From the sequence record NC_061421.1: DNA of 64,000 bases. One strand, given 5' to 3'. Below, piece by piece: positions 49,300 through 64,000 of the stretch (the first letter of the stretch is position 1; each line of letters begins with the position of its first letter). Under the pieces are notes generated by a model. It was not told the DNA's origin and did not search any database. It saw only the letters and a list, made by a program, of their open reading frames with translations. Position numbers and translations under genes: made by a program.

Positions 49300-49799
49300 G
49301 ATTTAAGTTTCCTTTGCAGATAAAGATCCAGTGAATCTTTGAGTTTTTCCAAATACTGCTGACAAGAACTGGATAACGTGATTTTCCCACTGGGGCCGGA
49401 AATTGTCAATAGACCGTAGGATAGGGATAATACGTTAAACGCAGCCAGATCCACCAGAATCGTGTGCGAACCCCAAGACACAATAATCTCCAAGTCTTGT
49501 ACAAAACGCGTTTTGGGGGCTTCTGAGGAGTTCTCGTAGACATTCTCGTGAAGTTTGTAGTCACTCCATTGTGCAGTGATGTACTCGTACACAGTTTCCG
49601 CTTCAAAGATGTCATCAGTTTCGATATTGATATTAACATCATCGTAGTTACGTACATTGACGTACGTAGACGGACAGACAAGACCTACGCTCTGGCCTTT
49701 TTTAACAAACTTGATCTTTTCCAGATCTACGTAAAACGTCCCTTTAGCCGTTGTGATAAACAACGTAGTATTATTGATTCTCTGGAGTATTGAATTCAT
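49296..49799 (-). CDS. hypothetical protein
   Basis: 167 aa. Confidence 0.7.
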   Translation of the reverse strand: MNSILQRINNTTLFITTAKGTFYVDLEKIKFVKKGQSVGLVCPSTYVNVRNYDDVNINIETDDIFEAETVYEYITAQWSDYKLHENVYENSSEAPKTRFVQDLEIIVSWGSHTILVDLAAFNVLSLSYGLLTISGPSGKITLSSSCQQYLEKLKDSLDLYLQRKLKS

Positions 49800-50715
49800 T
49801 GTTACTTACCTTATTGATGTTTTGGAGAATAAGTGCGTGTAAAATATCAAACGAAACAGGGTAATCAAAGACCCCGCCCGCAGCGTCGGGGTGCCCACCG
49901 CCGTTAAAGTCGTGTGCGAGTCTTTGCGCCCAACCCGTCCCTTTACGAGAACGGAAAGAAAGACCTAAACCTTTTTTGTTTAACGTTACGTTTACAACGA
50001 GGTCTACGTCATCTCTTTTTGCTAACAGCATCGAGGCTGCCTCAGATGCGTAATAGTACGGTGCCGAAAGATAAACCGCAGTAAACTGGAAAACGCCATT
50101 TGTTTCCACCGGGAAACATACTTTTTTATCGAGATGAAACGTGATATTTTTATTTCTGGATTCGATGAGTAAATCAACGACAGGTCGGATTTCCGCCTCC
50201 ACTCTTTCTTTGCTATACTCTAGCAGCGCGTTGAACGGCGGGAAGATATCTTCTTTGTTACCCTTCTTCAGGAAACGAACGAAGTACTCGTGATATTCCC
50301 GTTCACTGTCCGTAGCAATCCACAAATCTCGATTGTTAATCAAACGAATAACTTCCGGCATCTCGCCGTGGTTCAAATACTTCCAGGTTAAACCAGAACC
50401 AGCCAGATTACGATCAAAGTGAACGATAGTACCGGGGAAGATTGATCGGATGGTTTTACAATCCTCTTCTTTATCGTCGTGGTGATCGAGGATAACCAAT
50501 CCGCCTAATAAATGTTTGTTTTCTTCTACCCATTCTACCGGCGGGGTGAAATCGAGGAAATGAGCGTAGTGCTTTTTACCTTCCTCAAGTTTTGGCATGG
50601 CGCGGTAGTTTACCGGAACAAATGTCGGTTTGTCAGAGTACTTGTAGAAAAGTGCCGCTGCCGCGAAACCATCCATGCAAAGATCGTGATAAAAAACAAT
50701 TAATTCAGTTTCCAT
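49771..50715 (-). CDS. DHH/DHHA1-family phosphoesterase
   Basis: 314 aa; YHDLCMDG, FLDF, ILDHH, GGGHPDAAG. Confidence 0.9.
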   Translation of the reverse strand: METELIVFYHDLCMDGFAAAALFYKYSDKPTFVPVNYRAMPKLEEGKKHYAHFLDFTPPVEWVEENKHLLGGLVILDHHDDKEEDCKTIRSIFPGTIVHFDRNLAGSGLTWKYLNHGEMPEVIRLINNRDLWIATDSEREYHEYFVRFLKKGNKEDIFPPFNALLEYSKERVEAEIRPVVDLLIESRNKNITFHLDKKVCFPVETNGVFQFTAVYLSAPYYYASEAASMLLAKRDDVDLVVNVTLNKKGLGLSFRSRKGTGWAQRLAHDFNGGGHPDAAGGVFDYPVSFDILHALILQNINKVSNNEFNTPENQ

Positions 50716-50770: not shown

Positions 50771-51019
50771 TTAGACTATTTTCAATATCTGGCGATGGTA
50801 ATAACGCTCAGTCAGTGCATTCAGTGAAAATTCTGCACTTTCAGGACGCGCAATAAAATCATCGCAAACCTTCTGGGTTTCTTCAAAGACCAGACGCTTA
50901 CGAATACGTTCTGCAACACGCCGTACCATTTTGGCTTTACCTTTGTGTTCCCGAAACCCGATAGCCAAAGTGACTAACAAATCGATCATCTCATGATCGA
51001 GAGCGATATTTCTGCTCAT
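50771..51019 (-). CDS. hypothetical protein
   Basis: ATG 51019 in ATGA overlap with the upstream stop; 82 aa. Confidence 0.7.
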   Translation of the reverse strand: MSRNIALDHEMIDLLVTLAIGFREHKGKAKMVRRVAERIRKRLVFEETQKVCDDFIARPESAEFSLNALTERYYHRQILKIV

Positions 51020-51366
51020 CCGGCAATATCTACATTTGAGTAGAGAACGGAACAAGTGTCGTCGCCGTCGAAGACCACGCCAGATTCATTCATCCATTTA
51101 GTTTCGCTTTTAGATTTTTTATCCCGGAAAGACGCGGTGGTATAAACTTTATACCCCGGAGTTTGAGCTTCTCCTTCCATAGCGCTCAAGGGACTGGGTT
51201 TACTGCGGAGTACAGCTACTGAAACGGTCTTGGTGTCCACAGTAGGGAAAGTCGCCACAGCTTCCTTAACTGCATTTTGTACTCGGGAGATACAGGCCGC
51301 ATTCGGCGCTGCGATTGCTTGGTTGATTGTCAGGGATGCAATAGCCAGCAGAATAATTTTTTTCAT
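51016..51366 (-). CDS. exported protein with signal peptide and Cys pair
   Basis: MKKIILLAIASLTINQAIA|A; AAGGAG RBS. Confidence 0.8.
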   Translation of the reverse strand: MKKIILLAIASLTINQAIAAPNAACISRVQNAVKEAVATFPTVDTKTVSVAVLRSKPSPLSAMEGEAQTPGYKVYTTASFRDKKSKSETKWMNESGVVFDGDDTCSVLYSNVDIAG

Positions 51367-52485: not shown

Positions 52486-52542
52486 TTCCTTTTGTGATGA
52501 TTACAACGAAAAAAGAGGGTGACTACTCACCCTCGAAATAAT

Positions 52543-52725
52543 TTAAATTTTACAAGCCCCGCCTTCACAGTCATCGCTAGCTTCGATTTCCGGTTGGGCT
52601 TCGATGAACGCTTCGTTCTTTGCCGTCGCTGCTTCAACTTCTGCATCGCTGAGCGTAAATGAGTCAAAGTCGAGACTCTCATCTTTGGTACCGCTGAAAC
52701 GGGTACCGGGAACAGGTTGTGCCAT
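52543..52725 (-). CDS. 60-aa acidic protein ending in an NrdA-like redox tail (DDCEGGACKI)
   Basis: AAGGA RBS; hairpins on both sides (about 52509-52535 and 52802-52838); C-terminus nearly matches E. coli NrdA ...DDGCESGACKI. Confidence 0.8.
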   Translation of the reverse strand: MAQPVPGTRFSGTKDESLDFDSFTLSDAEVEAATAKNEAFIEAQPEIEASDDCEGGACKI

Positions 52726-52843
52726 TAGAACTTTTCCTTTTTTAATCCGAGACGTAATGCCTCAAAGAAAGACAAGTAAGACTTAAAAAAGAAAAAGACC
52801 CAGAGGCATAGAGGGTTACAAACCCTCTATGCCTTCTTTGAGA

Positions 52844-53314
52844 TCAATCAAGGTAAAAACATTTCCCGCCTTTGTTCTCCGCTACTAATTTTTTCAGTCC
52901 GTTAGTAGAGAAGACCACGTAGGCATCCGGGTGACCCTCAACGTACAGTTTGAAATTTTTCGCTTTGGTTACCTTAACGGTGTCGAAGAACGCACGCCAG
53001 TTACTGGATCCAACTCTAGAGAGGGGGGTAATCATCTGGTACGTATCCCCAGCTATGTCAATAACCAACGTATAACGGTCATCGGTAGTAGAAAGAGATT
53101 GTCCTTTCGCGTCGGTCAGGAAAAGCGCCTGATCTGGCCAGTTGTCACCGGTATCGCGACACGAGAACGACAGTGAATAACCGTCTGTACTTTCGGTATA
53201 AAACTCAAGGGTTCCTTGCTGATATGACTCTGTCCAGCGATTCACAACAGCTTGTGAGGCGAAGGACATAAACGCAGAAAGAGCCACCAGTGTTGCAGCG
53301 ATAAATTTTTTCAT
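52844..53314 (-). CDS. exported (periplasmic) hypothetical protein
   Basis: 156 aa; MKKFIAATLVALSAFMSFASQA signal peptide; two Cys. Confidence 0.8.
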   Translation of the reverse strand: MKKFIAATLVALSAFMSFASQAVVNRWTESYQQGTLEFYTESTDGYSLSFSCRDTGDNWPDQALFLTDAKGQSLSTTDDRYTLVIDIAGDTYQMITPLSRVGSSNWRAFFDTVKVTKAKNFKLYVEGHPDAYVVFSTNGLKKLVAENKGGKCFYLD

Positions 53315-63280: not shown

Positions 63281-63967
63281 TTACGCCGGATCCGGGTTAG
63301 GGATATTGACGTCACTGATACCCACCGCTACATCGGGATTAGGTTCAACGCTGTCATTTTGCTTCCTTTCGATTCGTAATTTCTCGGGGTGTTTCAGATT
63401 AAAACGACGCCGCATTTGGTAGAGATAATTGTTATCGTCGTCATCGCCGATAAATTTGATTTCATACCCAACCCGGTCAAAATAACTGTAGGTATCAGAG
63501 CGACTGTTTTTACGTTCTAATCCAACAACGACTTTCCCTTTAAACCGCTTATAGTCTTCCGTCCAACTCTGGAAATGTTTTGTTGGGAAACAGGGAGTTG
63601 AGAAGCTGATCTCGTAAACGGCTCCTCTGAACCAGGTCAGTTTATCGTCAATAAGCTGGGCGTCATTAGGGATCAACGCGATCAACCGCATCAACGGGTA
63701 AATAAGGTCCCGATGGATTGTTTCTCCTCGAAACTCACCACCAACCCTGACGATCTCTTCCCCGTTATCGTAGCCATCGGACCAGGTTGCGTTATCAAGG
63801 CTCCTGATCGCTTTCTGCCGAGTCTTTGAATCGAATTGACCCATCAGCTTAATGTAATGAAGAAACGTCTCTGTGAGCATATCACAGAGCGTAGGGTCGA
63901 TGAAAAATGATTCCGGTCGGATGTAATTTCCTTCAACGAAACCCGCTCCGGAACGAAGATACCTCAA
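63281..63967 (-). CDS. hypothetical protein
   Basis: 228 aa ORF. Confidence 0.65.
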   Translation of the reverse strand: MRYLRSGAGFVEGNYIRPESFFIDPTLCDMLTETFLHYIKLMGQFDSKTRQKAIRSLDNATWSDGYDNGEEIVRVGGEFRGETIHRDLIYPLMRLIALIPNDAQLIDDKLTWFRGAVYEISFSTPCFPTKHFQSWTEDYKRFKGKVVVGLERKNSRSDTYSYFDRVGYEIKFIGDDDDNNYLYQMRRRFNLKHPEKLRIERKQNDSVEPNPDVAVGISDVNIPNPDPA

Positions 63968-64000
63968 CTCAATAAACGCTTCGACGTGCTGCGGATTAAT

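What the first reader, a model, noticed from the sequence alone, without database searches (positions are those of the whole stretch)
52543..52725. Stand-alone 60-aa protein carrying a near-copy of the NrdA C-terminal redox tail
Seen: a small acidic, probably disordered protein ending ...IEASDDCEGGACKI, with its own RBS and hairpins on both sides, so probably monocistronic. Known: E. coli class Ia ribonucleotide reductase alpha (NrdA) ends ...DDGCESGACKI. That Cys-x4-Cys pair swings into the active site and re-reduces it with electrons from thioredoxin or glutaredoxin. Inference: the phage makes a detached tail. It could act in trans as an electron shuttle that boosts dNTP supply, complement a phage RNR lacking its tail, or compete for the RNR active site or Trx/Grx as a decoy. 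No RNR gene is in this window, so it is not the end of a split nrdA here.
Basis: partly seen in the sequence, partly recalled or inferred. Interest (0 to 1): 0.85.

Follow-up and report, generated by a model that had tools for sequence, protein, structure and literature searches.

The report
Phage-encoded free RNR redox tail
A jumbo Klebsiella phage that has no ribonucleotide reductase of its own encodes a 60-residue acidic, mostly disordered protein whose last 12 residues copy the cysteine-pair tail that the host's DNA-precursor enzyme uses to recharge itself; about a hundred related phage proteins keep that tail, and nobody appears to have described them.

Summary
Window 52543-52725 (minus strand) is gene vBKpMFBKp24_129 of Klebsiella jumbo phage FBKp24, annotated only as hypothetical. 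It encodes 60 residues with net charge -10. It has its own Shine-Dalgarno site and a strong terminator hairpin on each side.

Its last 8 residues match 7 of 8 of E. coli NrdA's last 8. They match exactly the NrdA end of Pectobacterium and Brenneria. A profile of the family, searched blind against the PDB, returns class Ia RNR alpha C-termini as its top 14 hits, always aligned end to end. Only the last 12 residues are NrdA-like.

The family has 105 distinct sequences in jumbo phages, in small lambdoid-like phages and as C-terminal fusions. The distal cysteine is invariant. Synonymous codon drift shows selection acting on the peptide.

No RNR gene was found in FBKp24, PhiEaH1 or CASP1, so the idea that it complements a tail-less phage RNR is refuted for this genome.

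The most likely function is that the peptide meets the host partners of the tail: thioredoxin or glutaredoxin, and the NrdA active site. Whether it boosts or inhibits host RNR cannot be decided from sequence. Its ortholog in phage phiR1-37 showed almost no RNA-seq reads.

The parts
52543..52725 (-). Coding sequence of the 60-aa acidic protein (gp129), stop codon included
   Evidence: Relatives found. Synonymous codon drift with a conserved peptide.
52546..52581 (-). Residues 49-60: the tip that resembles the NrdA tail, with Cys53 and Cys58 (C-x4-C-K-I)
   Evidence: Column shares.
52597..52647 (-). Residues 27-43: the only predicted helix (pLDDT 83-86)
52645..52683 (-). Residues 15-27: acidic-hydrophobic N-terminal motif, conserved in the family. 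Its likeness to the NrdB C-terminal peptide was tested and is not significant.
52735..52739 (-). Shine-Dalgarno AAGGA, 9 nt upstream of the ATG
52758..52774 (-). 17-nt upstream block identical in KpLz-2_45 (a different genus) and unique in the window. Candidate promoter or 5'-UTR element.
52785..52845 (-). Intrinsic terminator of the upstream gene gp130 (stem 52797-52845, U-tract 52785-52796). It isolates the small gene from upstream transcription.
52505..52534 (-). Intrinsic terminator directly after the small gene (stem 52515-52534, then a U-tract)

Best explanation
gp129 is a free-standing mimic of the C-terminal redox tail of the class Ia ribonucleotide reductase alpha subunit (NrdA). It is made by a phage that has no RNR and must draw its dNTPs from the host enzyme.

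Shown: the gene is real and under purifying selection. Its last 12 residues reproduce the NrdA tip, including both cysteines, their spacing and the terminal Lys-Ile. The rest is an acidic, flexible chain with one helix.

Inferred: because the tip is what thioredoxin or glutaredoxin and the NrdA active site recognise, the peptide meets those same partners. My preferred mechanism is a diffusible dithiol shuttle. Host Trx or Grx1 reduces the peptide's cysteine pair. The reduced tip enters the oxidised NrdA active site and re-reduces its disulfide. This adds a second re-reduction route and raises host RNR turnover while the phage replicates a 307-kb genome. The direction of the effect (boost rather than block) is the least secure step.
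For: Tip identity: 7 of 8 residues to E. coli NrdA, and 8 of 8 to Pectobacterium and Brenneria NrdA. Klebsiella NrdA ends ...DDDCESGACKI.

Blind searches: the top 14 PDB hits of the family profile are class Ia alpha C-termini, aligned end to end. They include chain 1qfn_B, the NrdA peptide solved bound to glutaredoxin 1. hhalign gives E 5.9e-6.

Conservation in 105 sequences: the distal Cys is present in 105 of 105, C-x4-C spacing in 97, Gly at position -5 in 100, and terminal Ile in 98. Only 2 of the 91 small members have any other cysteine. Retention of both thiols fits redox chemistry rather than binding alone.

Selection: synonymous codon changes across phages leave the peptide identical.

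No RNR in FBKp24, PhiEaH1 or CASP1. No RNR lies within 10 kb in 8 IMG/VR loci. The family also occurs in roughly 40-kb lambdoid-like phages, so the target must be a host protein.

FBKp24 encodes thymidylate synthase, DHFR, dUTPase, thymidine kinase and dTMP kinase. It therefore invests in dNTP supply downstream of RNR.

The role of the tail as a shuttle from Trx or Grx to the active site is established (PMC9669993, PMC4078304).
Against: No functional, binding or expression data exist for this protein.

The phiR1-37 ortholog g117 had almost no RNA-seq reads: mean 3.9, 1.5 and 1.2 in early, middle and late samples, against hundreds to tens of thousands for its neighbours (PMC4848604 Table S2). 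Loss of short transcripts cannot be excluded.

The similarity covers only 12 residues and is borderline in database terms (PDB E 0.02).

Phage tips mostly carry Gly where enterobacterial hosts carry Ser at position -6, so they are not tuned exactly to the host.

The enzyme's own tethered tail has a large local-concentration advantage. A free tail might add little, or might compete with substrate or with the native tail.

The conserved N-terminal motif, the helix and the fusions to unknown domains are not explained by a simple shuttle.
Confidence: 0.4

Rival explanations
1. Decoy or inhibitor, working like yeast Sml1. The free tail, anchored by its acidic N-terminal part, occupies the NrdA site used by the native tail or the substrate, or soaks up Trx or Grx. 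This lowers host RNR activity or diverts reducing power, for example to stall host replication or to hinder competing phages that need thioredoxin.
For: The same tip mimicry as above applies. There is a precedent for a small disordered protein that blocks regeneration through the large subunit's C-terminus: Zhang et al. 2007 PNAS, seen by title only in the reference lists. The whole module, not just the tip, is conserved, including in fusions. That fits a binding element as well as a tip. The protein is highly acidic, net charge -10.
Against: Carriers without an RNR of their own would starve themselves of dNTPs. Both cysteines are kept almost universally, which a pure blocker would not need. 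The tested likeness of the N-terminal motif to the NrdB alpha-binding peptide is not significant (p about 0.17 against permuted queries).
Confidence: 0.25
2. A portable, Trx- or Grx-rechargeable arm for a partner other than RNR. In this view the module delivers or senses reducing equivalents for another phage or host protein. The stand-alone genes would be split-off versions of the fusion proteins.
For: Fourteen of the 105 distinct family sequences are longer than 70 aa (82-360 aa) and carry the whole module at their extreme C-terminus. At least five unrelated N-terminal domains are involved. Some stand-alone members begin exactly where the fusions' linker begins.
Against: N-domain types A and B have no conserved cysteine apart from the tail pair, so they have no evident disulfide to recharge. 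Neither type has a homolog anywhere in FBKp24, nor among the neighbours of stand-alone genes. There are no Pfam hits and no informative fold match.
Confidence: 0.15
3. Convergent motif with an unrelated role, such as a metal-binding knuckle, a RiPP precursor, or a generic acidic DNA or protein mimic.
For: The match is short (12 residues). Six members have C-x3-C and two have C-x2-C spacing. There is no functional data.
Against: The blind PDB search returns RNR tails and nothing else above noise. The match includes the non-cysteine positions and the exact C-terminal register. No modifying enzymes lie nearby: terminators flank the gene and the neighbours have no Pfam domain. The other contexts are nin-like accessory regions.
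Confidence: 0.12
4. Leftover 3' end of a decayed or split phage nrdA gene, or a non-coding chance ORF.
For: Split nrdA genes are known in some phages (from my own knowledge, not tested here).
Against: Nothing upstream resembles NrdA. tblastn with full NrdA hits only the last 16 codons, and hhalign stops at 12 columns. A terminator and an unrelated gene lie immediately upstream. The gene has its own start and SD, conserved across genera. There are 105 distinct small homologs with synonymous drift.
Confidence: 0.02

Closest known systems
C-terminal redox tail of class Ia RNR alpha (E. coli NrdA residues about 750-761, Cys754/Cys759)
   Same: Both lie at the extreme C-terminus and share C-x4-C-K-I. 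Seven of 8 residues match E. coli and 8 of 8 match Pectobacterium and Brenneria. Both follow an acidic, flexible stretch.
   Different: The phage tip is not attached to an RNR catalytic barrel. It is a separate 60-aa gene product of a phage that has no RNR. Nothing upstream of the 12-residue tip is NrdA-like.
Yeast Sml1 (and Spd1, Hug1, Dif1): small disordered regulators of the RNR large subunit
   Same: Both are small, largely disordered proteins that plausibly act at the tail-dependent regeneration step of RNR.
   Different: There is no sequence relationship (Pfam gave no hit). As far as I know, Sml1 does not copy the cysteine pair. Sml1 is a cellular checkpoint protein, not a viral one. Inhibition is shown for Sml1 and only conjectured here.
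Phage-encoded thioredoxins and glutaredoxins that feed RNR (T4 NrdC, NrdH-type redoxins)
   Same: Both would be a phage investment in electron supply to ribonucleotide reduction.
   Different: Those proteins have a thioredoxin fold with CxxC and usually accompany a phage RNR. gp129 has no fold beyond one helix and no Trx-family hit, and it mimics the acceptor (the tail) rather than the donor.
PHROG families 14561, 10239 and 24014 (unknown function)
   Same: Weak to moderate matches with family members (E 0.048 for gp129; 2e-4 for the Miami homolog). These appear to be fragments of the same family.
   Different: No function is recorded and the RNR-tail likeness is not noted. The PHROGs split the family into several groups.

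Membership tests
Class Ia RNR alpha subunit (NrdA) | Catalytic ten-stranded barrel (Pfam PF02867), ATP cone and all-alpha domain | tested here: not met
   The 60-aa protein has no Pfam family at E up to 10. The NrdA proteins used for comparison carry PF02867, PF00317 and PF03477.
Class Ia RNR alpha subunit (NrdA) | C-terminal cysteine pair, C-x4-C, two residues from the end, after a flexible acidic linker | tested here: met
Class Ia RNR alpha subunit (NrdA) | The tail is reduced by Trx or Grx and re-reduces the active-site disulfide | not testable with these tools
   No complex prediction or assay was available. The 1qfn_B peptide (NrdA tail bound to Grx1) is among the profile hits.
Split or decayed phage nrdA | Other parts of nrdA, or nrdB, present in the same genome | tested here: not met
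   tblastn of E. coli NrdA and NrdB against the whole genome gave a best E of 0.74. The annotation has none. Twenty large ORFs have no RNR domain.
Sml1-type RNR inhibitors | Sequence membership in the Sml1 family | tested here: not met
   No Pfam hit of any kind.
Sml1-type RNR inhibitors | Binds the large subunit and competes with its C-terminal tail | not testable with these tools
   Only single-chain structure prediction was available.
Thioredoxin/glutaredoxin-fold redoxins (NrdC, NrdH) | Thioredoxin fold with a CxxC active site | tested here: not met
   The AlphaFold2 model has one helix only. The spacing is C-x4-C. There is no Pfam hit.
RiPP precursor peptide | Adjacent genes for modifying enzymes (radical SAM, YcaO, lanthionine synthetase and the like) | tested here: not met
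   The gene is flanked by terminators. The neighbours gp128 and gp130 have no such domains. Other contexts show none either.
NrdB C-terminal alpha-binding peptide (mimicry by the N-terminal motif) | Sequence likeness to the last 8 residues of NrdB beyond what composition gives | tested here: inconclusive
   The mean best score is 11.5, against 10.1 +/- 1.5 for permuted queries; 17% of permutations score as well.
The small-protein family defined here (PHROG 14561/10239/24014) | 42-70 aa, net charge -8 to -17, acidic-hydrophobic N-motif, helix, tail ending in a Cys pair | tested here: met

The most novel reading that the evidence does not exclude
Phages of several unrelated lineages carry a diffusible copy of the RNR alpha redox tail. 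These lineages include nucleus-forming jumbo phages, phiR1-37-like phages and small lambdoid-like phages. With this copy they directly reprogramme the host's class Ia RNR at its re-reduction step. That would be a mode of viral control of dNTP supply with no described counterpart in bacteria or their viruses, and the first natural example of the tail working, or being blocked, in trans as a separate polypeptide.
Probability: 0.5. Interest if true: 0.85.

Novelty: new variant of a known kind. Interest (0 to 1): 0.72.

Why it matters
RNR is the only de novo source of DNA precursors, and its tail-mediated re-reduction is a recognised step of its catalytic cycle. A natural, separately encoded tail would give RNR enzymologists a ready-made probe for how the tail reaches the active site and how Trx and Grx recognise it.

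It would also show how large phages without an RNR secure, or manipulate, the host's dNTP supply. In addition, it assigns a concrete, testable hypothesis to about a hundred clusters of 'hypothetical' small phage proteins, now split over three PHROGs of unknown function.

Tried and rejected
1. Single-sequence searches found nothing. These were Pfam, PDB phmmer with the whole protein and with the last 22 residues, and blastn against E. coli genomes (no DNA-level trace of nrdA). Only the family profile reached NrdA.

2. I tested the idea that the N-terminal acidic motif copies the NrdB C-terminal peptide that binds alpha. It does not rise above composition, so I dropped it as evidence.

3. I tested whether the Alcaligenes-type ending (...ACII) tracks a host NrdA ending. 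The one genome-contig scan found five matches. Four are small family ORFs inside Paenalcaligenes or Alcaligenaceae genomes, one is a 28-codon frame in an uncultured Bacteroidetes contig, and none is an NrdA end. The Alcaligenaceae NrdA tails themselves could not be fetched, so co-variation remains untested.

4. The fused N-terminal domains gave no clue to function. They have no Pfam hits. The AlphaFold2 model of type B has pTM 0.54, and Foldseek found no PDB match and only uncharacterised phage proteins. There is no homolog in FBKp24 or next to stand-alone genes.

5. Two 'Bacteriophage sp.' tblastn hits were spurious; they are ABC-transporter frames.

6. The contig carrying P0033 matched nothing in the phage or plasmid collections.

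7. Literature searches for such proteins, including the tail strings themselves, found nothing. The Zhang et al. 2007 paper on Sml1 was not held.

8. The upstream 17-nt block is not a recurring promoter motif in the window.

Declared slips. One search contained the 60-aa ORF pasted. That script timed out, and later scripts read the sequence from files. I have not used it to build anything, and this report gives column counts instead.

Full report
WHAT THE WINDOW IS

The window is bases 62001-126000 of Klebsiella phage vB_KpM_FBKp24 (MW394391.1, 307,210 bp, genus Maaswegvirus), at 100% identity. The genome carries a chimallin-like shell protein, a tubulin-like protein and split multisubunit RNA polymerases. 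It therefore belongs to the nucleus-forming jumbo phages.

THE OBSERVATION

The ORF at 52543..52725 on the minus strand is real and is annotated as vBKpMFBKp24_129, 'hypothetical protein'.
- It encodes 60 residues: 14 acidic, 4 basic, and only two cysteines, at positions 53 and 58. It ends Cys-Lys-Ile-stop.
- An AAGGA Shine-Dalgarno site sits 9 nt before the ATG.
- Immediately upstream, the neighbouring gene gp130 ends in a strong hairpin with a U-tract (-28.8 kcal/mol, z -6.5).
- Immediately downstream of the small gene there is a second hairpin with a U-tract (-14.7 kcal/mol, z -4.3).
- In Klebsiella phage KpLz-2_45, a different genus, the upstream stem is kept through compensatory changes. 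The SD site and a 17-nt block (52758-52774) are identical there. That block occurs nowhere else in the window.

AlphaFold2 with a 54-sequence alignment predicts one helix (residues 27-43) and coil for residues 1-26 and 44-60.

IS THE TAIL REALLY NrdA-LIKE?

I fetched E. coli K-12 nrdAB by accession (NC_000913.3, shown) and read the ends with the translate tool.
- NrdA's last eight residues and gp129's last eight differ at one position (Ser against Gly). Both sit at the extreme C-terminus after an acidic run.
- Among 120 enterobacterial NrdA clusters, 103 end with the E. coli version. Fourteen (Pectobacterium, Brenneria) end with exactly the phage version. Klebsiella NrdA matches gp129 at 10 of its last 11 positions.
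- Single-sequence searches are too weak to see a 12-residue match. A profile of the phage family searched blind against all PDB sequences returned class Ia RNR alpha chains as its top 14 hits (E 0.02-0.6). Every time, the profile's last position aligned to the chain's last residue.
- Among those hits is 1qfn_B, the NrdA tail peptide solved bound to glutaredoxin 1. The next RNR hit, after three unrelated RNA-polymerase subunit chains, is the C-terminus of the Lactobacillus class II enzyme, at E 4.5.
- Profile-profile comparison gives 85% probability and E 5.9e-6 over exactly 12 columns, family residues 49-60 against NrdA 750-761, and nothing further upstream.
- Within the phage genome, none of the other 5243 open frames of at least 30 codons has more than 3 of 8 identities to the NrdA end. 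The expected number with 7 of 8 is 1.7e-5.

THE FAMILY

tblastn against phage genomes, a profile search of 5.8 billion proteins and an exhaustive HMM search of 1.84 billion cluster representatives together give 105 distinct sequences.

Known carriers:
- the Klebsiella KpLz-2_45 group
- Erwinia Alexandravirus phages and PhiEaH1
- Yersinia phiR1-37 (g117)
- Klebsiella Miami-like phages
- a Stenotrophomonas phage
- Salmonella SA002
- the 47-kb Alcaligenes phage CASP1

CASP1-like copies lie in the accessory region between replication and packaging genes of roughly 40-kb lambdoid-like phages. Further copies lie inside Paenalcaligenes genomes.

Column counts from the C-terminus, out of 105:

| Position | Residue counts |
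|---|---|
| -8 | Cys 97 |
| -7 | Glu 83, Asp 13 |
| -6 | Gly 84, Ser 16 |
| -5 | Gly 100 |
| -4 | Ala 76, Gly 29 |
| -3 | Cys 105 |
| -2 | Lys 81 |
| -1 | Ile 98, Leu 7 |

Ninety-seven sequences have C-x4-C, six have C-x3-C and two have C-x2-C. Small members are 42-70 aa with net charge -8 to -17. Only 2 of 91 have any other cysteine.

The tail codons differ synonymously between phages while the peptide stays the same. Both Cys codons, all four Gly codons, three of the four Ala codons and both serine codon families are used. This is selection on a translated product.

Fourteen sequences are longer than 70 aa (82-360 aa) and carry the entire module at their extreme C-terminus, joined to at least five unrelated N-terminal domains.

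NO RNR TO COMPLEMENT

- FBKp24 has no annotated RNR, thioredoxin or glutaredoxin.
- tblastn with E. coli NrdA, NrdB and YfaE finds nothing better than E 0.74. The only NrdA C-terminal match is gp129 itself.
- Twenty large unannotated proteins have no RNR domain.
- The complete genomes of PhiEaH1 (218 kb) and CASP1 likewise have no class I RNR.
- No RNR gene lies within 10 kb of the small gene in eight IMG/VR loci.
- FBKp24 does encode thymidylate synthase, DHFR, dUTPase, thymidine kinase and dTMP kinase.

The partner must be a host protein.

MECHANISM

It is established that the class I tail cysteines re-reduce the active-site disulfide and are in turn reduced by thioredoxin or glutaredoxin (PMC9669993, PMC4078304). 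A separate peptide with the same tip should meet the same partners.

I rank the explanations as follows.

1. Trans-acting dithiol shuttle that adds re-reduction capacity to host NrdA (confidence 0.4). The carriers depend on host RNR, and both thiols are kept almost without exception.
2. Sml1-like decoy or blocker (0.25). It has a eukaryotic precedent and would explain why the acidic motif and helix are conserved. It is hard to reconcile with carriers that have no RNR of their own.
3. A rechargeable arm for some other partner (0.15). The fusions suggest it. However, the fused domains have no conserved cysteine, no homolog in FBKp24 and no recognisable fold.
4. A convergent motif with an unrelated role (0.12).
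5. A gene remnant (0.02).

My idea that the N-terminal motif copies the NrdB peptide that binds alpha did not beat permuted controls.

EVIDENCE AGAINST, STATED PLAINLY

There are no functional data. In the only transcriptome available for a carrier, phiR1-37 g117 has almost no reads (3.9, 1.5 and 1.2, against hundreds to tens of thousands for neighbours; PMC4848604 Table S2). Short monocistronic transcripts can be lost in library preparation, so this is a caution rather than a refutation.

NOVELTY

Pfam has no model for the family. Three PHROGs of unknown function each hold a fragment of it. Full-text searches, including the tail strings themselves, found no description.

The component, an RNR redox tail, is well known. 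Its existence as a detached, widely conserved phage gene appears to be new. I therefore file it as a new variant of a known kind, with interest 0.72.

SLIPS

They are declared under Tried and rejected.

Noticed in passing
window 63281-64000 (gene gp154 runs past the window end; L005:5284-6555, minus strand): A 424-aa 'hypothetical protein' has an N-terminal Pfam PF25185 Tad3 domain (Type I Thoeris inhibitor), E 8.9e-28. It is a likely anti-defence gene and is not annotated as such.
   Followed up: partly
window 49771-50715 (minus strand): gp124 is a DHH/DHHA1-family phosphoesterase. It may be a nanoRNase, pAp phosphatase or cyclic-nucleotide phosphodiesterase. Its role is unknown.
   Followed up: no
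window 52758-52774 (minus strand): A 17-nt block between the upstream terminator and the SD is identical in KpLz-2_45 although the coding regions have diverged to 72% aa identity. It is unique in the window. The adjacent bases can form a small hairpin with one compensatory change. It may be a promoter or a 5'-UTR element.
   Followed up: partly
L019:1701-2192 (Salmonella phage SA002); proteins P0178-P0188, P0202, P0211, P0213, P0216: The whole module occurs fused to the C-terminus of larger proteins with at least five unrelated N-terminal domains. Types A and B have no Pfam hit, no conserved cysteine and no informative fold match.
   Followed up: partly
L020:10001-10144 (metagenomic contigs of 60-581 kb): One family member (P0033) sits next to RND efflux pump, DoxX and acetyltransferase genes on very large contigs that match nothing in the phage or plasmid collections. 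The contig could be a megaphage, a plasmid or a chromosome.
   Followed up: partly
L026-L029 (Paenalcaligenes and Alcaligenaceae genomes): Family copies ending ...ACII lie inside bacterial genome assemblies, presumably in prophages. Their neighbourhoods were not examined.
   Followed up: no
P0051 (Erwinia phage Y3), P0050: P0051 has C-x2-C spacing instead of C-x4-C. P0050 has an extra cysteine-rich N-terminus.
   Followed up: no
L011:3010-3165 (phiR1-37 g117): The ortholog lies in a nearly silent island with g116, behind a predicted sigma-70-type promoter. It shows almost no RNA-seq reads at early, middle or late times.
   Followed up: partly
L005:30591-33208 and L006:30300-32366 (FBKp24, outside the window): The phage encodes nicotinamide phosphoribosyltransferase plus PRPP synthetase, and NadR plus an NMN transporter. 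This is a full NAD+ reconstitution set of the kind linked to counter-defence.
   Followed up: no
window 52844-53314 and 51016-51366 (minus strand): The neighbours gp130 (PHROG 3429, unknown function) and gp126 begin with signal-peptide-like hydrophobic segments. The small cytoplasmic-looking gene therefore sits among probable exported proteins.
   Followed up: no
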